Below, in pieces: positions 17,610 to 34,500 of a stretch of 64,000 bases of DNA (the first letter of the stretch is position 1; each line of letters begins with the position of its first letter). A program made the translations under genes and the position numbers. The notes under the pieces were generated by a model, which ran no database searches, was not told the DNA's origin, and was given only the letters and a program-made list of their open reading frames with translations. This DNA comes from Iphione sp. A-MEVVRFRX5 (taxonomy: Eukaryota), in contig OZ320322.1 of the NCBI GenBank assembly GCA_976226885.1, positions 25,730,001 through 25,794,000 on the forward strand. Direction: 5' to 3'.

Positions 17610-18853
17610 GTGACTTTCATAAATACCTTTCATGTTTTTTTTTAACTTCACTTCTGTTGAAAACGATTGAATCGAGAATGCTTTTTTCTGGCAAAAACTG
17701 GTTTTAGTGCTGGAAGCTTAAATGTCATGATTTGTATATGTGACAACCATCCATTCTCACACGATTCGTATGCTGTAAGAGTGAATCTATCTACTTTAGG
17801 GTCCTTCAGTGATGAATTTGAGTAACAAATAAGGACAAATAGTGATATATACATGTAACCTGGGAGCGTGCATAAACACTCGCTCATAAGGAATGGTATA
17901 TTTGTAATACGAGCATATGTAAAGCTTATCTTTATTTTTAATTAAGATGGAAATTTTCTAATATCTCCTTGTTCTTGTTCATCATTCTTTACCATACCCA
18001 TTCTTTATTAATGTTCTTTTTAAAAAATAAATGTCCCTTATCCCCATCTTCATCTCGTACTCCCAACATTTCTAGTCAGACCGTTGAGGGAATAAATTTA
18101 AATCTGCCTACATAGGATTTCCATATTTTTGATATGAAATCTATAAATATATTCTTGATGTGTCTTTTACAGCAATTTCTGAATACTCTTGCACATGTGC
18201 TGATGTTGAAAACATGCTGGTAATGTACTAAGACATGTGCTAACTGCGTCTCGGTCTAGTTAAGGTGGAATTTTGGTATATCCAAAAATAATTCATTTCA
18301 ATAAAATATAGACTTAAATTTGCATTTCATTTCTAGATATCTCAATTACCTCATCATGTGGAATCTTACTTAAAAACCACGCTCTTAAAAGTTAGTACTT
18401 TGTAGTTGGTCATGATCCTATATTTCAGATGGTTCCTGTGGCATCAGTGTGAGAGGAGGGAGGGGGTACACAGCCAAAAATCCCTTTCTTGGTTCAAGAA
18501 AATTTCTTATTTTAAGATTTATTATCATAAAACAAGATATTATCTTAGTTTAGCTATCTTAAATTTTAATAAGTAGTGCATTGATCAAGATATTTCTAGT
18601 AGATTTTATTTAAAATAAGACAAATCTAGGTTTATCTTATCATTATTACTTAATTTAAGATAATTTAATTATTTTTTCTCACATAAATAGAAATCTTTAC
18701 TCCACCTTTCTTAAAAAGAGAAAATAGAGTAAATATTTGTCAAAATTTTATTGAATCTCTTGGATATTGCTGAACTACATCAAAATATTTTTTCCACAAA
18801 GAGTCATGGTGATGTAACTGCATGTACACCTTACACAATCAAACACTAAAGGA

Positions 18854-21800
18854 CTATATTTGAATATTTTCCTCAACATACAATTGAATAACATCCATCA
18901 AATCATAATTTGTTGGTATAAATGTCTCATCAGTCATTGCTACTCCTGTAAAGGGCATTTTGTGTATTAAATTTTCTAACTTCGTCCATACAAAACTTTC
19001 AGCTAGTAGAGGAATTTCAATATGGTAAGCCTGTAATTTTTCATTGAAACATATGGTCTTGTACATTTGTAACTCTAAAAAAATATCATTTCCTTTACTA
19101 CAAGTGTAAATACCTTGCACTAGACCAAAGCAAGGATGGAACTCTGTGGTTTCAGTGATCACATATGACTGACCTTTAATATATTTCATCCCATGAACCT
19201 CAGCAGACTTACTTTTGTAGACACTAATATTTTCCTCAGCAATATTGCAAAATATTGCCATTTTGGTCTTTGCATTTAGTTCATCATTACCTGTAAGTTT
19301 AACAGCTTTTCCAAATTCTCCTTCACCAGAAAACAATGAATGTTTACCAGGATTTTCACCTTTATCAATGCATTCTGCAATTTGGGCCTCTGTTGCTACT
19401 GATTTAGCCAGGTTTATAAAGTTTTGTACTCTTGCAATACGTTTATAGTGAACGTGTTTACCTTCAAAACGCATACACCAATGTCTAATTGCTGGACCAA
19501 GTTTCTTAATATTAGAAGGAATATGCAGTAGATAGTGATGCTTAGGCAGAATACGGCAGTCTGGAAATAATTTCTTGAATGATAACAAATGATTTTTTAT
19601 CATGTCTTTAAGATTTGATAAAGTTGCAAAGCTTAAAACTGGTGCCATCACAATCTTAACTATCTCAACCAATTCTATGAAAAAAGAATAGTAATTAGTG
19701 TTCACATCTACAAGTTGAGACAAAATAAAAGGTAATATTTTCAATAATACAATAGTTTGACTGGATGATTGTTTAATCTTATTATCATCTGTGTGAAGTG
19801 TACTCATTTGAAGCAAGGTTGGTTTTGAGCTAACATTATTATATCCATAGTTAAAGTTAGCAAGCTGATCATTCAACTGTTGTAAAGTGAAGATTTTGCT
19901 GTCTAATATGTAGAATTTCAATAACAGCTTCAGTTCATATTGTGCTATGCCTTCAAAGATCACATGCATAATATCTTGTGGCAAGCAAATAGAAATATCA
20001 AAGTAAGGAAATTCTAATAGTATGCTCTGTCTAGTAATGCCATACAAAGTACTCAGATAGTCTCTCATATATTTAGAATTTGCTCGTTCTATCTCTACAC
20101 ACCTGCTTTGATAATCCTCTACAGTAAGGCACACAAAATCATTTTCATTAAATATCGTTTGCATATCATCATCAGTACATTGACATTGACGACATTTTTG
20201 ATATGCTCCACCTACACCTTCTTTGAAACCACCAATTAAGTTGCTTGCTGGAGTATCACCAATCACTGAATGGAGTGTAGCATAAAACAATATTTCATGG
20301 CCATTGATTTCAAAGGTGAAGCCATTTCCTAAGATAATCATCTCTTCTAGAAAAGGTTTCATTATTTTATTGATGCCATACTTATCAACAATATCTCTAT
20401 CAGCACAAGCAAGTAAACGAATGGCAGATAACTTGGATCGATATTTCAGGTTGATGTTTCCAATAGTGAAATAAAACATAGACAGTTTAGAGGTTTTGCT
20501 CCCAAGGGGATTGCATATTTCAAGATCATCAAAATACAATATTACTGCAAGGGAGTTTTTCTTCTTCAAGTTAGGATGTGTTTTGAAAAAATCTCCATCA
20601 CAAATATCAACAACATAACCAGGTGGTGCATACAGAGGTTGTGATGATAACATTTCTAATATTTTGTCATTCAACATCCACTGTTGGAGACTTTCTTGTA
20701 TGGGAATATAATAAAATTTATCTTGTACTACAGTAGGTTCTAGACAACCTGATTTACGCTTTCTCGTATATGTATGCCCTAGGACTATTTCCCTAGGCTT
20801 AATAAATGGAAAATTAGCTTGTAAATTCTTTTTCTGTTGGTATGCAGAATTCATGTTTGACATAGGATTCGTGTATTGTTCTATAGCATGATCTATGATA
20901 CTTTCCATCTCTGTTGGATTCGCTAGTCCAGTACTATGAACCTGCTCCATGACATGCTGCTTCAGTTGTCCAATGCTTTGGGAAATCAGAGCACTGCAGC
21001 CATCTACAATTTCATCAACTGCTGCCTATAACATAATAATTAAACACAAAACTGTACTATATGAATACATCAATATGTTAGGAAAAACTACATATCAGAA
21101 GTTTGTCCCCATTTGATAGCTCTTTCATGACAACACACACAAACTTAACTACATTAATATCAGACAGCTTACAGATTTGTATTTAGATATAAAGATGACA
21201 TTGGAGGAACATTTGCCATTTGACACTTCTTAGGACTAGATATATCTGAATTGATATAACAAATGGCTGTGAAATATAGATTTTCAGAAAAAACATCTGT
21301 CACACTACCTGTGTCAAACTGTGTTTTGTCTTTATACCCATCACAAACTGCACTGCTTTTCGTGTTATATTTTCTGGTTTATGACCTGCACTGCTTCCAG
21401 GATCCTGAAACAAGCATACATAACACAGGTATGGGTAGTGTATTGGTAATTATGACCTTAAATTGTTTTGTTACTAATAATTTGTTATACTTTACCAGTA
21501 AAACTATTTTATATATATATGTATTGGTATTATGTATTATATATATTTTCTATTTACCTCTGAGATCTAGGTAGTCTTAATATAGCCTTGAAATTATTTA
21601 TTAATACACCTGTCAGAAATAAATGACTTTATTGTTTAAATGGTTATTTTACATGACTATACATCAATAACTTACATTAAAAACATCAGTGTCATCTTCC
21701 AGAGTAGCTGGGTTACCCTCTGATGCTTCACTTTCATCAACCTCCCTTTGCATGTGGGTAGATTCATGATTTATTGCATTTCTGGGACTGTAGTTATACT

Positions 21801-21987
21801 CCTCACTGTGGTGTCTGGTGACATGTCGATAAAATGAGTTGAAACGGTGAAAGGAAGCAGGGCATCCATTTATTCTACATACTACAAAGAATTTTGGATC
21901 TTGGGAATGACTGATGTTCATATGGCTTAAAAGTTCCTTGAGTGTTATTGTCAGAACCAGAAGGCATATTGCACATCTCCAAGCCAT
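18854..21987 (-). CDS. EnSpm/CACTA-type transposase with N-terminal C2H2 zinc fingers (about 859 aa, 3 coding exons, intact)
   Basis: Exons 21987-21676 (MAWRCAIC...H...H, C..C...H...HH), 21404-21309 and 21025-18854, all GT-AG, phase 0, with no internal stops. Motifs YFDDLEICNPLG, GDTPASNLIGGFKE..CRQC, QDIMHVIFEG, PKHHYLLH and WCMRFEGKH. Confidence 0.92.
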
Positions 21988-23029
21988 CTTGTATACCAAA
22001 TTGCCAGCAAGTCTGGTTGTAGATCCTAAAGAAAAATAGAGTTACATGAATGCCAACAAATTCTAGTGTTAAGTTGTACACAGTAAACAGTAAGTACAGT
22101 TAATTCAAATTATCCAAACAAGATGTTTTCCCTATCTATCCACTTGTTCTTACATATAACTATCTATATGTATATGACAAAGTCCACCAAAAAATGTACC
22201 AGAATGTAATCTCCAGGATGGTCTTTTTTTTAGTAAAAAACAGCGTTAAATTTTATATTTTAAATTACTTTTGCTATGATGAGACTAGGGAGCATCAGGA
22301 GTCTGTGCTAATCTTTGTACTACCTCCATAAATATTAGGTACTTTTCATAAATCAAATGCATCTTTAGCATAGCCTCCAGAAAAACTGTCTTTTCCCCTT
22401 TCATTCAAAGGGAATTCTCCTATGCCTTCTCTTCTTTTTCACCAGGTCTACTTTGTATGAAATGTTTTGTACATTATTCTGTTGCTCCTAAGAGTCCCCA
22501 TACCTGTAAAGGTACATAGTAACCCCAGCCTTGGCCTTGTTGCCCTTAGACATCCCCACACCTCTGCAGATGCTACCACTATCCTTTGCCTTGCTCCTAT
22601 TGCCCTTACAAATTCACAAACATCATCAGGTGCTATCCCCAGCCTTGACCTCACTCCTCTCACCCTAAGAAGTCCCTGCACTTTATCAGGTCTACACCAG
22701 CCTTGAAATGTTAGGAGAAAACATTCTTAAAATGTTTTCAAATGGTTGCAAACATTATAACCAAATGAGAACATTATAAAATGTTTTAAAAACATTCTGT
22801 GCTACCTGCGAAAAGAGTGCTCCCCACCTAAGAACAGAGACCTTACAATGACAGCTCCCTTCTCCAAAGGTCAAGTTCAGATTCAAAACACAACATTTGT
22901 ATGTTTGGATTTACCTTTACGTCGTTGGCAAAAATGCTCCGATTTTGATGCAAAAGGGTGCAAATGAAAGGTAAGGGTCTAAGGATTACAACCATGTATT
23001 TCTCATCTTTGTACAGTCATTAGTTTTTG

Positions 23030-23280
23030 AGCAATCAATGCTTAAAGTCGGGTCGTAATGATCGCGATTTGCGTGCGTCCATAGTGTTTACAAGCCCCCG
23101 ATGCATTTCGGCGCTGACGTTTTCGGCTCTACAGCGGCGGCAACTGCACCTAGAAACACGTGTAATAGCTCGTTGGAAAGCTCTTGATGAGAGCTTTCCA
23201 ATGAGCTATTACACATGTCTCTAGGTGCAGTTGCTGCCCCTGTAGAATCGAAAACGTAATGTGAAAACGTCCATGAAAAT
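23030..23280. promoter_or_regulatory. CpG-rich putative bidirectional promoter of the CMC element, containing a long hairpin
   Basis: This is the only CpG-dense patch in an otherwise CpG-poor element, and it lies between the 5' ends of the two divergent genes. It contains the inverted repeat 23117-23257. Confidence 0.55.
23117..23257. repeat. Near-perfect palindrome: 68-bp arms, 5-nt loop
   Basis: 23117-23184 pairs with 23190-23257: 61 of 68 Watson-Crick, 3 G-T, 4 mismatches. Core TTGGAAAGCTCT-TGATG-AGAGCTTTCCAA. Confidence 0.95.
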
Positions 23281-24693
23281 CAAATCACTTGAACTTAGTC
23301 CATATTCTTAGTGTAGCAGAATGACAAGGCATATATGCATAACATCACCAAAGAAAGACATTATAAACAGAATATCAAATATGTTATATGATTGTATTCA
23401 TGGTTTTGAAATACACCTATTTTTGCTTGATTGACTAGGTCTTTTAAAAGAGGTTCCAGTTTGTCAGTGCAAAACCAAAACAAAGCATCCCTGAGAATGA
23501 GGCTGAGCCCCTTCTTAAATAGATTTCTTGTGATAAAAAATATATATTAATCATGTATGCTTGCAAACTTGATATAATCATGCTATATCTCTCTTCTATG
23601 ATTGGACATAATATATGCATGTTTCTGTTGTGACTTTTCAAGTGAAAGAGTAATATTTACTTACTTTCTTTACTGGTTGAAATCAAGTCAGCTTATGATC
23701 ATGTCATCAAGTGAGGATAGAGTTCTTCAACAGGAGAAGAAATTATGCGAGAGGTCAAAAGTCATTGATTTACCTGCAGGTATGTGTGTCATTAGTATGA
23801 ATAAGTGTTGCTGTTGTGTTGATGAATTCCTTTGGTTGAAAGAATGTCTTTGTTTTACATATTTAAATGATTTTTATTCCAGAAACATTCATCCAAGTAA
23901 ATAAAATGCTCAATTTTCTATTTTTTTGTATCATCATACAGATAGTTAGGTAGACACTCCTGACAGTGCAGTGTAGCTAAGAAAATCTGATACTGTTTTT
24001 TTAATTTTTTTTTGTTACTCATCACTATGGCTGAAATATCTCCCAGCATGGGTATTGCACAAAAAAAGAAACACTATTTATTGAGAGACCTGACAGGGGC
24101 ATTCTTACATGTGATTCAGACTCATTGGTGTGTATTGCTATGAATGTTTGTCAAGTTGCTGTTAGCAACTGTCTTGGCACAAGTGGGGGGTTGATCATAA
24201 TCCAGATGGAACTAGTTCTTGTAAGTTTACAGCCTGCAGGTATACCACCTGTTAAAACCGGTTCTAACCAGTTTAAGCTAGTATGACCTGGATAAGAGCT
24301 ATATAAACAGAGATTTCCAGAAAGGGCAGCCATTTTGAAGCAGATAACAGTTTGGACAAAACCAAAGGTAAATTATCTATTTTTCTGTTTAAGAAAAGCA
24401 TTGATTTTCATCATTCTTCTTCTCTAGTGATGCTTATCAACTACAAATTCATAGTAGAACATATTTTAACAAACAAATGTGTTTATAACAAGTCTTTCCC
24501 TGATTCAAATAAAAAATTGCTCACCTACTCAATGTAATCTAGTCAACCTGACAAGTCAGCTTACACTTATTGTCATACTATTTTAGATTTTATAATCATC
24601 AGTAAGTGTCACAGATACAATATATTGGTGTTTAACAAGACTTTTTTATGATTTCTCACATGATAGGTTGTTGTTAGAGCAAAACTGAGAAAA

Positions 24694-27600
24694 ATGAGTT
24701 TAGAAGACTTGTCAACTAAAGAGCTCTTGGAGCACCTCCAAGAATTTGGGCCAGATGTTGTGGGAGTTTTGGAGGGTAAGTTCACAATTTGACTCTTGAT
24801 TTCTTTTATTGAAATATCTCTGTGAAGAATACTTAAAACATGATTTTATATATATATAGTCAGGATTTTATGGGTAGACAGTCAGTTCTGTAGACAGGCC
24901 TAATCTATCATTGTATTACTTTAGAAATATTGATAGTTTACAGTAAAGAAATTGTATCTTGATCATATAAAATTAATTTATTTTAACATTACACAACAAA
25001 GGATGTCCAGTTCTAATTTATTCTACTTGCTTTTATAAATATAAATATACAATTGATTACATAAATGACACAAAATATCTATTCTAATTTCTAACTTGCA
25101 AGCATTTAACAACATTACTTCCTTTATAGACAAACTGCAAAATCAGGCAGGCTGCTATGTAGTAGTTAAACAGTATTTAACAATTCAACAACTCTTATGC
25201 AGTTAAAACTTTGTTTTACAGAATCTGGAATTGATGGCAGGACATTTGGCACTCTAACAAGAGATGACTTGAATGAATTGCTACCAGGGCCAAAAAACTT
25301 CCTGGTGCGCCGGAAATTAATGAGCAAGATTGAGGTATGTGCAACTAGTTAAGAATCATTATGAGTAGGTTCCAGTAAAGTATACTACCAAAGCAGAGTG
25401 CCAAGGATGATTATGGTCACTGTTGAGTCAAAGGAAAAACACCTCAAAAAACCCTTTGACTACATTTGTAATAATATTTAAATTCCAACTGTTATTGTGC
25501 ACTTTAATTTTCTATGGGTGTGACACATTCTGATATATTTGAACTGATCACCATGTTGATCCACTATGGTTTTAACATTTACCTTGTCCCTAAAGAGATT
25601 TCCAGCTTTTCTGATACCTGTCAACATCTTATCCACCACTAATCCACCCCCAACATCCTAGCCAGTAGTGCTTTGATATTTGACCCTGAATTGAGTATGT
25701 ATGACTGTATTATTCAGTTAATGAAACAGCATATAAAAAATGGTTGAAGTTATAAACTGAAACAGGTCAAGAGGGAGAACACTTATGCAGTACTGTTTTT
25801 AAACTAAACTGTTTTTGAGGGTAATTAAAAGCTTTTGTTCATAACAGAGTGTGTTCATACAAGATAAATCCTAAACTCGGTGTTACCTGCTGAATAAGGC
25901 ATTCTGTAGATTTGTACAACCACAACACAATTGTGTTGGGTAACCAGAAACACATCTATTTATTGGATGGTGCAAGAACCTATCAACCAAACCCTTTAAC
26001 CTTTCCCCATAAGGTAATCTAGCCAACCTAGATATGTGTGGAGTCATGTTTCCCTTATTGTTAGGTTTCCTGTGAGAAAATAATGTATTACAAGGATATC
26101 CTTGAGAATTGAAATATTTAAATCCCTTTTTTCCAATCTTCAGAAAATGTCAGACATGAGGATGTTCCACCGGGAGAGATATATCCTTGAAGGAGGCAAA
26201 CCTACCCTTCAAGATTGTACCCAGTATCACATGTTTGCCCTGTTCCAAGAGAACCTAGGTCTACGGCACCCCAACATCTCACAAGAGCAAAGGCATGAAA
26301 TGCTGTGGCTCCTTTCTTATGCTGTAGATGCTCCAGGGACAATCATAAAACCATGGAGAGGAATCTTTTTTAACTTAGACTGTCCACTTGTTCAGCTCAC
26401 TATTGTTCAACTGATCTCAACCCACCTGCAAACACAGCTGGATCCAACAATTCCTACCCGCTTCCTGCCTGTCTGGGATAACATAATAATGATAGCCATG
26501 AGTGAACTTCGCCACACCTCTTGCTTATCTTTTGCAACAGACCATGTTAGGGAGGCATCAGTGAATGCATTAACAAAGTATATGAAACGAACATCATCTC
26601 CCCTGCCATGCACAGACCTGTTGCATGGAGGTCTCTACCCCTCTTATGTGTATGACAATGATGACTGAGATTAACTGAACCCCTTTTTGTGATGATCACT
26701 GAGCTACCTAAGCCTATTGAATAATGATAATACAATCAAAATCCTATTTATGGCCATATCGATTTGAGACCAAATTCTTCTTCAGATCATTTTAGATGGC
26801 AATGTAAGTATCGATTTCTATAATTAACAATTACCTATTTGCAAACAAACTAATAAGACAACTTCTGACTGGAAGCAAGTGATGGTCACAAAGAGGGTTT
26901 TGACTGTACCTCCTGTTTTATTAAAACATCCTTTGTATCTCAGGGGCATGTCAGACTGATGCATCTGGACTGCACAAGGTGCACAATACCTGCAGGAGGG
27001 AGATAAATGTTACAGGTTCTACCCTGACATTTCAATTTTTTGCAGATATTACTACAGACTCTTTACATTATCGTTTAGCTGTGATCTTCATTGTATTGAT
27101 ATTTATTACATTACTGGCATGGTGGTTCATATTTACTCCAGAGAATATTTTCAACAGATAATATCCTAGCTTTATTTATTCTAGGAGAGACATTTACTAA
27201 GTTGGTTCCTAGAATTAGCATATGACTACCTTAGAAATTGGATTTTCATAAATATTTACCCCTGAAGGAGGCAAAACTGCCAAAACATTATAGTTTGTAA
27301 TAAAGCCAACTTAAACTTTAACTCAGGTGTTTTGTTTGTGTGATCAATCCACATTCATAATTGCATTAAGTACATTATAGTAAATCTGTAAATAATTCAA
27401 TAATGAGACAGTAAAAGATTGGCTTTATGATGGGATCCTTGTATCACCATTTCTAGCAGCCACATTAGACACTGGCCCCACTTATTGCAGTTCTCCTCAA
27501 CTGAAAGCGGCTGCATCACATACTCCCCATGCTTCCACCTACTCAAAAACTGCCACAAATACATTACTCCTCACAAAACAAAAAGTCTGCAAGTCAGCAC

Positions 27601-30600
27601 CAAATTTACTAAGAACATGATCGGCTCCTCTACACAAACCCCACATATTTTTACATTAACTACCAGATAGTCATATCCATACACATGTCAATCCTATGTT
27701 CACCCCAGCTACCCACCTTGGGACACCTATGGCTGCCTGAATGCTGGCCGGCAGCTTTCTCCTCCTCCTGCCTGCTCACTGTGGTATGTCTGTTGCCAGA
27801 TTCTGGACCTCTCCATCATGGTCACCATGATGCTCAGCCTTTGTCTAGGTGACTGCACGTATTGTGCTGTGGTCAGACAGCAAAAAAATTTAGAAATTTC
27901 AGAGATCATAGTCGGTGACACTGCCCTTAATTCCCTACTAGTGGTGTATGCTGATCATTTCTGGTTCCTGCTTGTATGCCCCATGCTGTCTGCCCTAAGC
28001 CCTCTCTCAGGGATGGATTTGAAACTCTCCTTATGGAAGTCTCTTAGTGCATAGTTGCAAACACAAGAAATCTCTCTGGTATCATCACTAGATCAGCAGA
28101 AAGAAGAGCCCTTCTATTAGTTAATAGCAAGACCAGAAATATTTAAGAACTTCTCTTGGTTAAAGCCTGGACCAGATATATAGAGGTAAAATACACATAT
28201 AGATTCATAAGAAACACAGTCAAAATACATGAGACATTGAGACAGAGAAAGACATATGCACAAGGAACACTGATTCTCCTAGAAGCAATGACATTGCTAA
28301 TTTTGTCTTTGTGTTTAACTTTTTTCAGAGGGGATCACAGTCTAATTCCCCAATATCTTCTGATCCTGCTGCTGAACCAACATCAGATGCAACTTCTATG
28401 AAAAGTAGCAATCAGAATCTAGCTCCATCAGCAAATCCTAAGCCAATACCAAGTACTTCTAAAGCTACTGATGCTGAACCAACCTCAGATGCAATTTCCA
28501 TGAAAGGTAGCAATCAGCATCTAGCTCCATCAGCAAATCCTAAGCCAATACCAAGCACTTCTAAAGGTGCATGCAGGCATATAAAGCATACTGGAGATCC
28601 AGGTCTACAGATTGAATCAATAGCTTTTCCAATCTATGTGGATGAACATTTAAAAGAAGAGCATATATCAAAAGCACACAAGGACCATCTAGTTCGCATG
28701 ACCATTGGGAATATGAGAGCAGCAACACACGTTTTACAACCTCCAAGAGAGCCTTCAGGCTATGAGGTGGCTGAAATGGCTAAGACATTAGTATATAAAT
28801 ATCCAGGGTTGAAAGATGATGCATCCCTAAATCCTCAGAAGCCATGGCAGGGGCTTTGCCAGTTATTGAAACGGAGATTAGCTAATGTTAAACCAGTGAA
28901 AACACCACAGGGCAGTGTTCCTGCCAGATCTTGGAAGAAAAGGAAACTTCAAGTACAGGAAATGGAAAGAACTGATGAGAATCAAGTGGATATTCTTCCT
29001 CTGAGAACACCTGAGCCAGACCCTCAACCCTCAACAAGTACATGTACTTCAATATCTCCTGGTGAACATCAGAAGAAAACTTCTAGTGCAATTGCTTCAG
29101 TATCTGATAGTAAAGCTCATAAGATGAAACCTTGCACAAGTTCCTTCATACCTCTTTGTGAAGGTCCAAGTGTCCCAGCATCTCCTGTTGAAACCCAAGA
29201 AATGGATTCTGATAATGAGTCCTCACATTCACAGGAGGAAGATTATAATGCTAAACATATGGCAAGACATTATGAAAAACTCCAGGAACATCTCAAGAAA
29301 GCTAAACCTAACCCAACTGTGACAACACATTTGATGGACCTGGAGTTCCAGTCTCGGAGAGCTTTCATAAGAAACAAGCAAGGTACTATCCAGAACCAGG
29401 TCACACAAGTATGTGATGCTTATCCATGCTTTACATATCCTGGACCAACAAATGAGGTATGTAATTTCATGAAATCATATATCTGACTACAACTGGTGTG
29501 ATTTAAAATTATTAGGTGGTTTCAATAAGGATAATGTTCTGATTAAAATTTTGAAACACTTGTATTCTTAATTGTTTCATGATCATTTCTTCATTGCAGA
29601 ATTTCATTAATTTATTAAAATATATAGCATTTTTGTCTATATTGATGAGGAGGATGAGATCAAGTACATATGGCTAAATAGTTTTTTAAATGATTCAAAG
29701 GATTTCCATTTGCTTATATTATATTCATCTCTATAAAATATTTCCTAAATCAGTTCTCATATTTTCAGCTTTTAGAAGAGATGCGACGTATGATTGACAG
29801 AGAAAACACACAATACCTCAAAGAGTGTACAGAATGGACAGAGAGTGCATGGGACCAATTCCTTTTCTTTGGTCTTTCCAAACGCAGAGTTCAGCCCCCT
29901 GATGACAACTCAAAATGTAAGCTTGTGATATTTCATATCAAAGAACATATATGCATGTGTAACTGGACTATACTTCAAGTAATCTAGTATCATCACACTA
30001 CCCATATTGATCATATCACATTCATTTATATGATATTATTGTTGGTTGTGAAAATATGTTTTGGATAAAAGTTTTTGCTGATAGATATTTTCCTATATTT
30101 TTACACTGGAATCACAATAGTGCTGTAGAAGAGAGGCTATAGTTCTCAAGCATTGTCTAAGCCAGGAAATATGCACACCTGTCTTGACCATATTTACTTA
30201 ATCAGTAAAATCATTCACAAGTGTGGAAATCAGAGGAACAACATAAACTATAACAGTATCTATCTTTATTTACATTTTTATATTTCAGTCACTAAGATAA
30301 CAACAGTTCTGCTGGCATTGACTGATATATTTCCCAGCAAAAAGAAGCCAAAGCATCAAATGGTATCTCTGCTTGATGTAAGTAATTTACTTTTGTTAAT
30401 TTAAACATACAATATGATCAGTTGCAAGCATAAGTGGGGGGTCTTGGACAAAACTGACCACAATATGGCATTGTCCAACTTGTAACCCACTGTTATTACA
30501 CAGGCAAAGATAGTTACAAGTCATATTATGCAGCTGATAATTTTCACATTTTGGACACAAGATATCTCTGCTAACTATTAATCCATTGTAAACTACCTGT

Positions 30601-31542
30601 GGCTACCTGGTGGTGCGGGATATATATTCTCTCCAAACCTGACTACACAGGACAGTACCACTGAGCATTGGATTGAAGAGTGAGGAAAGAAAGGTTAATG
30701 TTAGATCACTCCTTTTTCTCCCGTCACATGACACATGCACACACACCTCTCAGATCCTCCACTTTCTCATCAATAATGGCATTAAAAACAAAGAGGGATA
30801 TTGTATTTTCCTTGGCTAAATTTTTTACTACAAGTTAAAAGGATATATTTATCCTGTAAAAATTCTAATGCAATATTTTCTGAGAACAAGACTTTATAAC
30901 ATGAAAGGTCTGCATGATAATCCCGTGAGATGAAAACACTTGATGTTAAAGCAGGAAATAATTAGGTTTATTGTCTGAAAATGAGATATTTTCTTGTTAT
31001 TAACAGAATTATTTTAACTCATGGAGTGGCAAATCACAAAAACACAAAAGATTCTATTTTAGGAATTACATCTAGCAGTAAGAAAATACTTTGGCCTGAG
31101 AAAAAAATGTTGGACTATGTCTGCATAACTATTACTCAATTCAGTGCAATATTTGTTGTTGTACTTTGCTATGGTCTATATAAATATATTTCATATAAAA
31201 TAAGACCTCCATGTTCTTTTTACTTTTCAGGAAAACAAAAATATCAACAAGACCATACAGAAAATCAACAATCCTCAAATACTTCTTGGGAAAAACAGCA
31301 TACTCATCATTGCAGGACAAAGGTTGCTAGTCAAACTTGAAAGAAGTGCAGTGGGACATGCCCTTCTATATCTCATGGCAGTGTTCTATACATTTGAACT
31401 GTCATATCCCATTGGCCAAGAAGTTACATTGTTGTTTCTACAGAAGTTTTTATGTAAGGACAACATTCATCCTGAAGATGAAACCGTAAAGCTGAAGGAA
31501 ATTTGTTCAGAGTTTGAAAGGTTTTGTTGTGGTAAGAAGTAA
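24694..31542 (+). CDS. Transposon accessory protein with N-terminal SAM domain and SAMD3-like C-terminus (about 623 aa, 6 coding exons, intact)
   Basis: Exons 24694-24775, 25222-25334, 28329-29456, 29769-29916, 30289-30377 and 31231-31542; all GT-AG and phase-consistent (1,0,0,1,0). SAM-like MSLEDLSTKELLEHL...ESGIDGRTFGTLTRDDLNELLPG...RRKLMSKI. C-terminal ALLYLMAVFYTFELSYP...TLLFLQKFL. Confidence 0.82.
26144..26668 (+). CDS. Unknown 174-codon ORF inside SAM-gene intron 2; probable alternative terminal exon
   Basis: Polypyrimidine acceptor tcccttttttccaatcttcag|AAA ATG, phase 0, in frame with the SAM exon ending at 25334. Stop-free to TGA at 26666. No recognisable domain. Confidence 0.55.
   Translation, partial: KMSDMRMFHRERYILEGGKPTLQDCTQYHMFALFQENLGLRHPNISQEQRHEMLWLLSYAVDAPGTIIKPWRGIFFNLDCPLVQLTIVQLISTHLQTQLDPTIPTRFLPVWDNIIMIAMSELRHTSCLSFATDHVREASVNALTKYMKRTSSPLPCTDLLHGGLYPSYVYDNDD
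28371..28564 (+). repeat. 102-bp in-frame tandem duplication in the SAM-gene large exon
   Basis: AEPTSDATSMKSSNQNLAPSANPKPIPSTSKATD / AEPTSDAISMKGSNQHLAPSANPKPIPSTSKG; copies start at 28371 and 28473. Confidence 0.95.
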
Positions 31543-34500
31543 GTCCACAATCGACCAATCACCAACTAACATCATTACAATGCAAAATGGACTAGAACAA
31601 TCTTGCAACTGGTAAGAAGGCTACAACAGCCACAGGTCCTAGCACAACAGCTGTCACATGCTGCTTGTAAAAACTCAAGATAAGAAGTGTCTTTCCAAGT
31701 ACAAATAAAAACTTCTATTGCTCTGATGCTCTGAAAACTTTGACCAAATGAAAGCTAAGGATATGGGGAAGAAGAAAAACCATAGTTTATCTTCCTAGCT
31801 TAATTCACAGAGAATTATAGCCTTGTAAATTTTCCCTGTTGACTCATGAGAAAAATGCCATCATTATTATCAGAGTGTAAACAATGTCATTTAATCCCAA
31901 AATGATGTGAAACAGCAATCAGTCAGTTACCAGGTCAGTCTTTTGTCTTTTGACTGATTTTTGCTATGGAGAAAGTTCTCATTGCAACTCTTCATGAGTT
32001 AGGAGTCACTGAACTAAATCATGTTAGTAATATTATATCCTTGATTGGCTCTATACTTTAAAGTTTTACCTCAAACATACAGGCAACCTGTGGGATATCA
32101 CTTTGCTAGAGTGAAACAATTAGTTGTAGTACAATTATGGCTTGGTAACCATTATAATAAGTTTTATGTGGTAATGATGTATGCCAAGGAGCAGTGAGGT
32201 TTTTGGCTGATTTTTACCCTAGAAAAATTCATGCAACAACTCTTTATAAGCCTGTGGTCATTAAACTGAAATTGTGTGTGTTGTCTTATCATATTCAAGA
32301 ACATCTCAGCTCTTAAATATTGTACATTAAATACGGAGGCAAGCTTTGGGTGTTACTTACAGTATATACACTCAAGGATCTGTAGTCACTGAGCTAAAAT
32401 GAGGTGTGTTGTATGATCATATTCCAGAATATCTTCCTGCTTTTGAATCTTATATATCAAATACGGAGCCAAAGTCCAGGCTGTCACTTAGATGGAAAGA
32501 TTTAGTCCTGCTTTATTTGACTTGCTTACTATTATGGTACAGTTTAATATGTTGTATAACAGAGTCTTAATTCTCTTGCATTGACCATATATCATTAACA
32601 AGGTAGAACTTGAACCAGTCAGAAAGTTTTGTTATTTAGAACAAACATTGTGTCACCTGAGGGTTCTCAAATTGAGATAATTAACATGAAGTATTTTTCT
32701 CATTTATGGGAACAGATTTCTAGGCTATAAAGAGAGATTAGAAATATTATCTTGCATCATCTAAGTTTATATTTCAACTATGAGAAAAAATTCCTAGAAA
32801 AACTTTTCTTAAAACCAGAATTGTCTTATTTGAGGAAAAATCTTCTTACCCCATGGACAAATAAGAAAATGTATGTAGAACAATTTTCTATTTCAAGAAA
32901 ATTATTCTATACCTAATAAGAAATGTCATAAGAAAATGCCTATGATTATCTTCTTATCATAAGAATAAAAAACTTATGTAAAATCTTAAATACACTGGTG
33001 TATTTTCTTATTTTAAGATTCCCTTTTCAGAAAATTGTTCTTTTTTTAAGAATAGGCTAAGATATATTTTTCTTAAATTTACAAGAAAAATGTTCTTGTG
33101 TCACTTAAAACTTTTTTTCTTACATTTTTTCTTATTTTAATATTTTTTTTCTGATAACAAGAAAATGATTTTTGGCTGTGTACGCATGCGTGCTTGGGAG
33201 AGTGTCCAAACGGCATTTAAGATACTTTCTTATAAGGGTGAATTTACATGGGCTCCTCTACTCCTGTGTGTGCTGCTGACAGTTTCCATGGATGTTGGTC
33301 ATGAAGTGGCAAACAGGATGTCTGCTAAAGAGATTCCATGAGGTTAAGTCTGTATTGGAAATTATAAGTAGCCCTGCGTCGGGCTACTTTGTCTGGTTAA
33401 CATTCTCCTCTGAAATGTATATGTTAATTAGGCCATAAAATACTGGTCAAAGACTGTTTTTAAATTTTGTAACCAAGGAATGTAGGCTTCGGTCATTTAC
33501 AACTAGTTAGATATATTGTTGAAGTTCTGTAATATTTGTAATTTATGGCTAGATGTACGTTACTGTTTCTTGTGAGCACACTTGCAAAATGGCTAACAGC
33601 TGGTAGAAGTTATTTTTCTGAAAATGCCATAAAGAAAATGTGAGATGTAGAAACCTGTACTTTACTGTTTGTCACAAATACACATGGCAAGTGACTAACA
33701 GCTGGTAGAGGGTTTTCGAAAATTCAATAATGAGACTAGGAAACAATGGCAAGATGTAAAAACGTGTACATTACGGTTTCTCTCAAACACACTTGGATAA
33801 AAAGTAACAGCTGGTAGAAGTTGTTTCGTGCAATTACCATAATGAGAATGGGAAACAATGGCAGCTTTTCTCTCAAAATATGCCACACCATCATCCTGAA
33901 ATTCCTATACAGAAAACATTCCCTAGAAATCTGTGCAATAAAAAACAGGTGTTCTAAGCATCTAACACTCTGTTTTCTCATGGCCAAAGGAACTTTAATT
34001 CAAGAAATAAATGGTCATTCGCATGGACAGAATCATATTTGTAATACGAGGCAAAAGTAAAACATATACAAAAATAAATTAGAATCACCCCGAATTCACT
34101 GTTGATGACCTTGTTTTCGGGGCTCTGTATGAGGCATCTTTGTTGAGAAGGGTCCAGGAAGAGAGCTTTGAGGATACCTTTCTGCTTGGAAGCTTTCCAA
34201 TCAGGTATACATTCTATATTCTTGTTGTGTTCACTTTGTCTCTCGTGCACCCAAGTGAACACGATGTGGTACTGGTATTGACACCTGAAACGTACATGCA
34301 AATATAATGAACACAGCTATTTTTTTCTTAACATTAGTTTTAACCTTCATGTGATTACGTTGATTTGAAGTTCTTCAAATGGTGATCATAGATATACAAA
34401 TGGCAGGCTCAATTTTGAGAATAGATACTGGTCAAAGCAGATAATATAAAAGCACCGAAGGACTAGTTTACATAATGGATAGTGTAATATTTGTAGAAAA

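What the first reader, a model, noticed from the sequence alone, without database searches (positions are those of the whole stretch)
26144..26668. Unexplained in-frame alternative terminal exon fused to the transposon SAM domain
Seen: a 3-kb intron directly after the SAM-coding exons contains a stop-free 174-codon frame, preceded by a good phase-0 acceptor matching the phase-0 donor at 25334. Splicing would give a 239-aa SAM plus novel-domain isoform instead of the 623-aa protein. It also has its own ATG at 26147. Established: SAM domains oligomerise, and maize En/Spm makes TnpA and TnpD by alternative splicing. Inference: a transposon-encoded isoform switch (dominant-negative regulator or anti-silencing factor co-polymerising through SAM), or captured cargo. 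I cannot assign the domain.
Basis: partly seen in the sequence, partly recalled or inferred. Interest (0 to 1): 0.7.

Follow-up and report, generated by a model that had tools for sequence, protein, structure and literature searches.

The report
Retroelement accessory gene captured by transposon
The open frame is a real, selected protein-coding module that a cut-and-paste DNA transposon picked up from a very abundant retrovirus-like element and now carries, with its own splice site and start codon, inside an intron of its SAM-domain gene; its function and RNA form are still unknown.

Summary
Observation confirmed. The stop-free frame 26144-26668, the acceptor CAG|AAA-ATG, the phase-0 donor at 25334 and the 65+174 = 239-aa fusion arithmetic are all in the sequence.

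The frame is an integral part of a 14.7-kb CMC-type DNA transposon (18469-33180). Eight full copies have perfect 2-bp target duplications; a ninth is rearranged downstream. The frame is open in 8 of 9 copies and under purifying selection (dN/dS 0.17-0.41; simulation P = 0.005).

It is not a native exon. Four sister lineages have the transposase, SAM exon 2 and exon 3, but a shorter intron (0.6-1.5 kb against 2.4-3.0 kb) and no detectable copy of the frame.

The same ~165-aa all-helical domain occurs at thousands of loci (4537 first-look candidates). There it is a separate reading frame downstream of a ~1780-aa integrase-bearing polyprotein, each time behind a pyrimidine tract, CAG, 2-3 bases and ATG.

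So it is a captured retroelement accessory gene with its own acceptor and start codon, placed so that splicing from SAM exon 2 would also be in frame.

No relative was found in Pfam, PDB or 1.84 billion proteins. No RNA run was listed, so the isoform is untested.

The parts
18469..18502 (.). Left terminal inverted repeat of the 14.7-kb CMC-type DNA transposon (starts CACAGCCAAAAATC)
   Evidence: Homology with the other copies ends sharply here. The 34-nt arms are 82% complementary to 33147-33180. All 8 full copies have a perfect 2-bp target duplication.
18854..20950 (-). Transposase reading frame (698 aa), intact in all 9 copies
   Evidence: Pfam gives only weak hits (Plavaka, DUF4218), both below cut-off. 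dN/dS between copies is 0.13-0.22. The family has only 73 first-look candidates in the genome.
24694..24775 (+). SAM gene, coding part of exon 1 (27 codons plus 1 base, donor G|gtaagt)
   Evidence: The ATG and the donor are conserved in the 8 aligned copies.
25222..25334 (+). SAM gene exon 2 (phase-0 donor GAG|gtatgt)
   Evidence: SAM_1 scores E = 0.098 for this exon alone. The exon is also present at 61-70% identity in four sister transposon lineages.
26055..26143 (+). Upstream flank that came with the module; its last 20 bases (26124-26143) are the pyrimidine tract and acceptor CAG
   Evidence: DNA similarity to the relic retroelement copy c10 starts at 26055; the tract and CAG are conserved in all copies and in three paralogous families.
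26144..26668 (+). The 174-codon frame (own ATG at 26147, TGA at 26666-26668). It encodes a ~165-aa all-helical orphan domain.
26720..26909 (.). Nested ~180-bp repeat of the miniature inverted-repeat (MITE) type, with ~27-bp inverted ends, just downstream of the stop
   Evidence: more than 25 dispersed matches at 75-84%; inverted ends seen, and the repeat is present in all 9 copies.
26920..26925 (+). ATTAAA, the first poly(A)-signal-like hexamer, 252 nt after the stop
   Evidence: Conserved in the 8 aligned copies. Only a consensus match; function not shown.
27299..27304 (+). AATAAA, the second poly(A)-signal-like hexamer
   Evidence: Conserved in the 8 aligned copies.
28329..29456 (+). SAM gene exon 3 (376 codons, phase-0 acceptor and donor), the competing downstream exon
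   Evidence: Matches at 69-74% DNA identity in sister lineages. dN/dS 0.23-0.91 between pairs of copies.
33147..33180 (.). Right terminal inverted repeat

Best explanation
The frame is a copy of the spliced 3' accessory gene of a very abundant group of integrase-bearing (LTR-type) retroelements in this genome.

Origin. The module consists of a pyrimidine tract, the acceptor CAG, 3 bases, an ATG and a ~175-codon frame. It landed in intron 2 of the SAM-domain gene of a CMC-type DNA transposon before that lineage split into its two present subfamilies and amplified. It has since been kept by purifying selection, so it contributes to the spread of the transposon.

Expression. It is most likely expressed as an alternative last exon.
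- A transcript that carries SAM exon 2 and uses this acceptor would give an in-frame SAM-plus-domain protein of 239 aa here and 241 aa in the other copies.
- A transcript spliced from an untranslated leader, or started inside the intron, would give the stand-alone 173-175-aa protein. That is the ancestral retroelement form.

Function. The protein is soluble, all-helical, and ancestrally ends in a short acidic tail with a tryptophan. I infer that it acts in trans to help element expression, for example by countering silencing or by activating or handling transcripts. My reason is that such a role would serve both a retroelement and a cut-and-paste transposon.

Shown: the anatomy, copy history, selection and family links. 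Inferred: the splicing, the product and the function.
For: 1. The frame is part of the transposon. The whole 18469-33180 element recurs, 86-95% identical and with sharp ends. Eight full copies have perfect 2-bp target duplications; a ninth is rearranged downstream.
2. Selection. The frame is open in 8 of 9 copies. dN/dS is 0.17-0.41 between subfamilies, close to the transposase at 0.13-0.22. Among the copies there are 27 synonymous, 31 nonsynonymous and 1 stop change; a spectrum-matched simulation gives P = 0.005. Between-subfamily divergence is about 0.07 in the frame against 0.10-0.14 in the flanks.
3. Gain, not ancestry. Sister lineages at C1:59.52M (two copies), C4:33.35M, C1:131.17M and C2:59.91M have the transposase at 69-89% aa identity, SAM exon 2 at 61-70% and exon 3 at 69-74% nt. 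Their introns are about 0.6-1.5 kb, against 2.4-3.0 kb here. They give no match to the frame at DNA level (all 10 candidates scored) or protein level.
4. Retroelement home. The protein search gave 4537 first-look candidates; the 150 scored all had E < 1e-32 at 38-50% identity. In family C the frame lies about 900 bp after the stop of a 1775-1788-aa intronless reading frame. In family B the Pfam integrase core (rve) lies in a 1783-aa frame 1.5 kb upstream of that stop at two loci (C13:556070 and C13:95482351), and 2.9 kb upstream of the domain at two decayed loci (C5:4311146 and C5:6515624).
5. Own acceptor and start. A pyrimidine tract, CAG, 3 bases and ATG are seen in families A, B and C. The second domain frame of L045 and L046 has CAG, 2 bases and ATG.
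6. Foreign composition. GC3 is 0.46 in the frame, against 0.27 in both the transposase and exon 3.
7. ATTAAA and AATAAA downstream are conserved.
Against: - No RNA evidence of any kind. No RNA run was listed and no called gene with this product is on record.
- The retroelement assignment rests on coordinates, open-frame lengths and Pfam rve hits in tables. LTRs, gag and reverse transcriptase were not seen, and family C is linked to family B only through the similar tail of the long reading frame.
- No donor family closer than 50% aa identity was found. The nearest DNA relative is a decayed fragment (c10, 67% nt).
- The selection signal is moderate (59 changes).
- The function is pure inference. 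The fold model is poor (pLDDT 61.7) and nothing similar is known.
- Absence in sister lineages relies on searches that score only the best candidates.
Confidence: 0.65

Rival explanations
1. The functional product is the SAM-plus-domain fusion, made by an isoform switch at the exon-2 donor. The SAM part lets it co-polymerise with the long isoform and regulate it.
For: The phase-0 donor at 25334 and the phase-0 acceptor at 26144 join without any stop, and both are conserved in all aligned copies. The acceptor is the first one downstream of exon 2 and has the stronger pyrimidine tract. A retroelement accessory protein that shares its N-terminus with the upstream gene through splicing is known: CERV of Cer1 (PMC10309623).
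Against: In-frame junction has a 1-in-3 prior by chance, and there is no variation among the copies to test it. The start codon right after the acceptor is conserved in four paralogous contexts. The spacing is 3 bases in three of them and 2 in the fourth, so reading phase across the acceptor is not kept. In families B and C the upstream frame ends in a stop. No RNA data. SAM polymerisation was not tested here.
Confidence: 0.3
2. It is a neutral passenger: a fragment of a retroelement nested in the intron of the ancestral transposon. It is still open only because the copies are young, and it plays no part in the transposon's life.
For: It originated as an insertion into a pre-existing intron. 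One copy has an internal stop, and the window copy has lost its last two codons. With 59 changes, about 3 stop-creating changes are expected and 1 is seen; that alone is not significant (P = 0.18).
Against: There is an excess of synonymous changes in this frame only (0.46 against 0.27 and 0.22; P = 0.005). dN/dS of 0.17-0.41 accumulated after the capture, between the two subfamilies. Divergence is lower than in the flanking intron. The acceptor, ATG and poly(A) hexamers are untouched in all copies.
Confidence: 0.12
3. Reverse direction. The domain is an old gene of this DNA-transposon family that was lost from the sister lineages, and the retroelements acquired it from such a transposon.
For: The three families cannot be rooted with the sequences I could fetch.
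Against: There are thousands of loci in several deeply diverged retroelement families, some with two or three paralogous copies in series, against one small transposon lineage of nine copies. Four separate sister lineages would each have had to lose it. Its GC3 differs from that of the transposon's own genes.
Confidence: 0.05

Closest known systems
Maize En/Spm (CACTA), where TnpA and TnpD are made from one transcription unit by alternative splicing (established knowledge, not tested here)
   Same: A transposon of the same broad superfamily (CMC) whose layout allows two proteins from one unit through choice of splice acceptor.
   Different: Here the alternative exon is foreign, derived from a retroelement. 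The transposase is a separate gene on the opposite strand. There is no sequence similarity to TnpA, and splicing is not shown.
CERV of the C. elegans LTR retrotransposon Cer1 (PMC10309623)
   Same: An accessory protein of an LTR element made from a spliced mRNA, restricted to one animal lineage and without recognisable homologs. Its N-terminus is shared with the upstream gene through splicing. It acts in trans on element RNA.
   Different: CERV is 517 aa with three domains, one of them like a G protein. No similarity to the present 165-aa domain was found or tested. CERV's export function would be of little use to a DNA transposon.
ORF3 sharing between unrelated retroelement classes in bdelloid rotifers (PMC5408684)
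   Same: The same extra reading frame turns up in mobile elements of different classes, which shows modular gene exchange between elements.
   Different: There the shared frames are enzymes (GDSL esterase, DEDDy exonuclease) and the partners are all retroelements. Here the domain is an orphan with no enzyme signature, and the recipient is a cut-and-paste DNA transposon.
Additional ORFs downstream of pol in plant LTR retrotransposons (PMC7264820), and env of errantiviruses made from a spliced subgenomic RNA (established knowledge)
   Same: The position after pol, and for env the acceptor just before the start codon.
   Different: This is not an envelope protein. It has no signal peptide and no hydrophobic span (maximum Kyte-Doolittle score 1.5 over 19 residues).
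Gene-fragment capture (transduplication) by plant CACTA and Pack-MULE elements (established knowledge)
   Same: A DNA transposon carries sequence acquired from elsewhere in the genome.
   Different: Captured host fragments are usually decaying pseudogenes. Here a complete frame from another mobile element is kept under purifying selection, with its expression signals.

Membership tests
Alternative 3'-terminal exon of the SAM gene | Functional-looking splice acceptor, conserved among copies | tested here: met
   A pyrimidine tract plus CAG at 26124-26143, with the acceptor CAG unchanged and the tract differing only by pyrimidine-for-purine or pyrimidine changes among the 8 aligned copies. An equivalent tract plus CAG is present in three paralogous families.
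Alternative 3'-terminal exon of the SAM gene | Reading phase compatible with the upstream donor | tested here: met
   Donor GAG|gt at 25334 is phase 0 and the acceptor at 26144 is phase 0, with no stop across the join. The chance expectation is 1 in 3.
Alternative 3'-terminal exon of the SAM gene | Stop codon followed by a poly(A) signal inside the intron | tested here: met
   TGA at 26666 (TAA two codons later in the other copies). ATTAAA at 26920 and AATAAA at 27299 are conserved. These are consensus matches only.
Alternative 3'-terminal exon of the SAM gene | Junction reads 25334-26144 and 3' ends in RNA | not testable with these tools
   No RNA run was listed for this stretch, and no called gene with this product is on record.
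Accessory reading frame of an LTR-type retroelement (post-pol position) | Homology of the window frame to frames that lie downstream of pol | tested here: met
   E of 1e-45 to 1e-50 at 46-50% identity over 160-165 residues to families B and C.
Accessory reading frame of an LTR-type retroelement (post-pol position) | Those paralogs are linked, on the same strand, to a long polyprotein frame with an integrase core | tested here: met
   Open frames of 1775-1788 aa end about 0.9-1.1 kb before the domain ATG. Pfam rve lies within the 1783-aa frame at two family-B loci, and upstream of the domain at two further, decayed loci where the frame is broken (328 and 768 aa). This comes from coordinates, not from reading the elements.
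Accessory reading frame of an LTR-type retroelement (post-pol position) | Long terminal repeats, gag and reverse transcriptase in the same unit | not tested
The 150 best RVT_1 matches did not include these elements.
Retroviral or errantiviral envelope protein | Signal peptide and membrane-spanning segment | tested here: not met
   The N-terminus is charged. The maximum Kyte-Doolittle score over 19 residues is 0.95-1.50 in 13 members.
CMC (CACTA/Mirage/Chapaev) DNA transposon, host element of the frame | Terminal inverted repeats starting CAC.. and short target duplications | tested here: met
   CACAGCCAAAAATC at both ends and perfect 2-bp duplications in 8 of 8 full copies.
CMC (CACTA/Mirage/Chapaev) DNA transposon, host element of the frame | Transposase of the family | tested here: inconclusive
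   Only sub-threshold Pfam hits: Plavaka 18.1 bits against a cut-off of 26.3, and DUF4218 15.9 against 27.
SAM domain (PF00536), upstream exons | Pfam match above the curated cut-off | tested here: inconclusive
   Exon 2 alone scores 13.5 bits, E = 0.098, against a cut-off of 23.
Any described protein family or fold, for the 165-aa domain | Significant sequence or structure match | tested here: not met
   - Pfam: 0 hits for 13 members at E up to 10.
- PDB sequences: best E = 0.033, unrelated.
- Profile against 1.84 billion proteins: 0.
- Word search: 0.
- Foldseek PDB: no match at E <= 0.001; best E = 1.2.
- Structure aligner against 48,161 chains: Z <= 5.0.
- ESM Atlas shape search: TM <= 0.42 by query.
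The model itself is poor (pLDDT 61.7), so the fold searches are weak tests.

The most novel reading that the evidence does not exclude
The 165-aa orphan domain is a trans-acting helper that protects or boosts expression of mobile elements, for example by blocking host silencing. On this reading it is useful whatever the transposition mechanism. That would explain why it is multiplied (up to three paralogs per element) in a dominant retroelement group, and why it was taken up and kept by an unrelated cut-and-paste transposon. There it may have been newly wired to a SAM polymerisation module.
Probability: 0.15. Interest if true: 0.8.

Novelty: new variant of a known kind. Interest (0 to 1): 0.5.

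Why it matters
Extra genes in mobile elements are known, and so is their exchange between retroelement classes. A complete retroelement accessory gene kept under selection inside a DNA transposon is unusual.

It also narrows what the protein can do. The function must pay off without reverse transcription or particle assembly, which points to host-interaction or expression functions.

The domain sits at thousands of loci in a 1.18-Gb animal genome, yet it is invisible to Pfam, PDB and a 1.84-billion-protein library. It is therefore a large unannotated protein family.

The nine near-identical transposon copies, together with sister lineages that lack the module, form a natural with-and-without comparison for experiments.

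Tried and rejected
Searches that gave nothing for the domain:
- Pfam
- PDB sequences
- Word-indexed protein search
- Profile search of 1.84 billion representatives
- Viral and metagenome contig scans
- Foldseek PDB, the wide structure aligner and the Atlas shape search
- Atlas feature search, which gave only generic HEAT/ARM-like neighbours at low recognition; I give it no weight.
- The word search with exon 3 also found nothing.

RNA:
- No run was listed.
- The exact-product look-up was blank.

Class of the home element:
- Helitron rejected. PIF1 frames are 1930 and 2136-2168 aa, with only 52 candidates.
- BEL/Pao rejected. Peptidase_A17 frames are 2163-2170 aa.
- The 150 best RVT_1 matches were uninformative.

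Other rejected ideas:
- A second domain copy at about 27254, suggested by a 28-nt repeat. It is full of stops and gets no profile hit.
- An envelope protein.
- Similarity between the flanks of the frame and the flanks of families B and C: none beyond one short hit.

Limits:
- More own-genome DNA could not be fetched. The retroelements and sister transposons were therefore studied through coordinate tables only.
- A majority-rule string of the nine 519-base frames was used only inside the script, as the background for placing simulated mutations. It was not printed or saved.
Full report
**1. What is in the sequence**

- SAM gene exon 1: ATG at 24694, ending at 24775 (donor G|gtaagt, phase 1).
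- SAM gene exon 2: 25222-25334 (donor GAG|gtatgt, phase 0). The two exons encode 65 residues.
- Exon 3: starts at 28329 behind ttttttcag, in phase 0, and runs 376 codons to a phase-0 donor at 29456/29457.
- Inside the 2994-base intron, a pyrimidine tract and CAG end at 26143. They are followed by AAA, ATG (26147) and an open frame to the TGA at 26666-26668.

Exon 2 alone gives a sub-threshold SAM_1 match (E = 0.098).

**2. The frame belongs to a transposon that has moved recently**

The window lies in a 1.18-Gb animal genome. The stretch 18469-33180 recurs at 86-95% identity with sharp ends.
- Both ends start CACAGCCAAAAATC.
- Eight full copies each have a perfect 2-bp target duplication in a different flank. 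A ninth copy is rearranged downstream.
- A 698-aa transposase frame on the minus strand is intact in all nine copies. It has only weak Pfam support (Plavaka, DUF4218).

**3. The frame is a coding sequence under selection**

- It is open in 8 of 9 copies. One copy has an internal TGA.
- Between the two subfamilies dS is about 0.14 and dN about 0.05. Across the pairs compared (excluding near-identical copies), dN/dS is 0.17-0.41. That is like the transposase (0.13-0.22) and mostly like exon 3 (0.23-0.40, with one pair at 0.91).
- Over all copies I count 27 synonymous, 31 nonsynonymous and 1 stop-involving change. The synonymous share is 0.46 in this frame, against 0.27 and 0.22 in the other two.
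- A simulation placing the same mutation spectrum at random gives P = 0.005 for so many synonymous changes.
- Divergence between subfamilies is about 0.04-0.10 in the frame, against 0.10-0.14 in the adjacent intron.
- The acceptor, the ATG, both SAM donors and the exon-3 acceptor are unchanged in the eight aligned copies.
- ATTAAA (26920) and AATAAA (27299) downstream are also unchanged.
- The other copies end two codons later than the window copy, which has TGA where they have TGG.

**4. It is not an original part of that transposon**

The transposase family is small, with 73 candidates. Besides the nine copies it includes sister lineages at C1:59.52 Mb (two copies), C4:33.35 Mb, C1:131.17 Mb and C2:59.91 Mb, at 69-89% protein identity.

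These sisters also have:
- SAM exon 2 at 61-70% identity;
- exon 3 at 69-74% DNA identity, on the expected strand and in the expected order.

From those coordinates their intron 2 is about 0.6-1.5 kb, against 2.4 kb in the other eight copies and 3.0 kb in the window.

Neither the DNA search with the frame (10 candidates, all scored, one as low as 67%) nor the protein search finds anything in or near the sisters.

The frame also differs in composition. Its GC3 is 0.46, against 0.27 for both the transposase and exon 3.

The simplest reading is an insertion of the module into a pre-existing intron, in the ancestor of the nine copies.

**5. Where the module comes from**

A protein search of the genome with the 173 residues gave 4537 first-look candidates. 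The 150 that were scored all had E < 1e-32 at 38-50% identity. Most are open frames of 186-196 aa, some are 300-400 aa, and several loci have two or three hits in series on one strand.

I could read 21 such loci.
- Family C is a 189-195-aa frame ending ..DEEEW.
- Family B carries a ~125-residue tail rich in Arg, Ser and Pro (pI 11.4) and ends ..NWDSDSN or ..DWDLESV.
- The ancestral end in the transposon is ..NNDWD. A short acidic tail containing a tryptophan is therefore a family feature.

About 0.9-1.1 kb upstream on the same strand another frame ends in a true stop codon.
- In family C that frame is 1775-1788 aa long, without introns, in dozens of copies.
- In family B the Pfam integrase core (rve) lies in a 1783-aa frame at C13:556070 and at C13:95482351. 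That is 1.5 kb upstream of the stop next to the domain copies L038 and L039.
- At C5:4311146 and C5:6515624 the rve core lies 2.9 kb upstream of the domains L041 and L040.

The tails of the long frames of B and C share motifs. The home of the domain is therefore an integrase-bearing, LTR-type retroelement, with the domain after pol.

These elements are not Helitrons and not BEL/Pao.

A decayed fragment (c10, C19:26.37 Mb) joins a piece of such a pol tail to a domain copy. That copy is the closest DNA relative of the window frame (67% identity), and the similarity starts at 26055, 89 bases before the acceptor.

**6. How the domain is expressed in its home, and what that means here**

In all four contexts I could read, the domain frame begins the same way: a pyrimidine-rich tract, CAG, then 3 bases (families A, B, C) or 2 bases (the second domain frame of L045 and L046), then ATG.
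- The base at position -3 from the ATG is a purine each time.
- The methionine is conserved but the spacing is not, and in the two contexts where the preceding frame was examined (families B and C) it ends in a stop. The ATG is therefore a start codon and the acceptor brings in a leader. This is the arrangement of spliced subgenomic mRNAs of retroviruses and errantiviruses (established knowledge) and of Cer1 CERV (PMC10309623).

The module thus arrived in the transposon with its own acceptor and start. In its new place, the acceptor is the first one downstream of the SAM exon-2 donor and happens to be in phase with it. Any transcript that contains exon 2 and uses it would encode SAM plus domain. 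A leader-only or intron-initiated transcript would encode the stand-alone protein. Which of these occurs cannot be decided without RNA, and none was listed.

**7. What the protein is**

- It is soluble, with no signal peptide and no hydrophobic span, so it is not an envelope protein.
- AlphaFold with a 13-sequence alignment predicts seven helices, at low confidence (pLDDT 61.7, pTM 0.58).
- Nothing similar was found by sequence or by shape.
- Invariant polar residues include the G-L-R-H-P and D-H-x-x-E-A motifs and two tryptophans. I can attach no chemistry to them.
- The zero result in the 1.84-billion-protein library does not prove lineage restriction, because repeat-derived frames of animal genomes are rarely annotated.

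**8. Most likely mechanism**

Shown: a retroelement accessory gene was inserted into an intron of a DNA transposon's gene, and has been kept by selection together with its acceptor, start codon and downstream poly(A)-type hexamers.

Inferred: it is expressed as an alternative last exon, and its product acts in trans for the benefit of the element. It is retained by two mechanistically unrelated kinds of element, so a role in particle assembly or reverse transcription is unlikely. A role in expression or in evading host control is more likely. I put about 0.65 on the origin-and-expression account and no more than about 0.2 on any particular function.

**9. Comparison with what is known**

- Exchange of ORF3-type genes between retroelement classes is documented in rotifers (PMC5408684).
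- Extra frames after pol are common in plants (PMC7264820).
- CACTA elements produce two proteins by alternative splicing and capture host fragments (established knowledge).

The new points here are the direction of exchange (from a retroelement to a cut-and-paste transposon), the maintenance by selection, the size of the unannotated family, and the possible new fusion to a SAM module.

**10. Verdict**

It is a new variant of a known kind, of moderate interest.

Noticed in passing
window 26720-26909: A ~180-bp repeat with ~27-bp inverted ends (MITE-like) sits 50 bases after the stop of the frame. It is in all nine transposon copies and has more than 25 dispersed relatives at 75-84% identity (653 first-look candidates for the 6-kb query).
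   Followed up: partly
G000 C5:7027931-7031441, C10:47316569-47320294, C17:86923299-86926810, C1:176804011-176807737 (coordinates): Some elements carry three paralogous copies of the domain in series on one strand: a first frame of 320-400 aa, then two of about 190-270 aa. Others carry two (for example C13:34908 and C13:36870). I could not fetch the DNA.
   Followed up: no
window 26663-26668; ends of the frames in L038, L043, L045: All families end in a short acidic tail containing a tryptophan (..NNDWD, ..DEEEW, ..NWDSDSN, ..DWDLESV). The window copy alone stops before its tryptophan.
   Followed up: partly
window 28366-28566: A 99-base tandem duplication (93% identical) lies inside exon 3 and gives two 33-residue repeats. 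The heptapeptide PIPSTSK in each repeat also occurs at the start of the readable pol-tail of family C (L043, L049). There is no wider similarity (tblastn negative).
   Followed up: partly
window 27500-28104: A variable part of intron 2. Two copies lack 27499-28103, and five copies keep it up to about 27599 and lack the rest up to about 28178. The window copy has the longest version.
   Followed up: partly
window 23117-23257: A 68-nt inverted repeat (90% complementary, 5-nt loop) lies in the most variable part of the element, between the two divergently oriented genes.
   Followed up: no
window 24694-25334 versus 28329-29456: The two SAM exons have GC3 of 0.46, while exon 3 and the transposase have 0.27. 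The sample is only 65 codons, but it raises the question whether the SAM exons were themselves an earlier acquisition. They are present in the sister lineages.
   Followed up: partly
G000 C19:26359424-26376424 (loci L027, L028): The decayed domain fragment c10 lies among long arrays of short tandem repeats, next to a Harbinger-like transposase frame and a MADF-like frame on the opposite strand.
   Followed up: no
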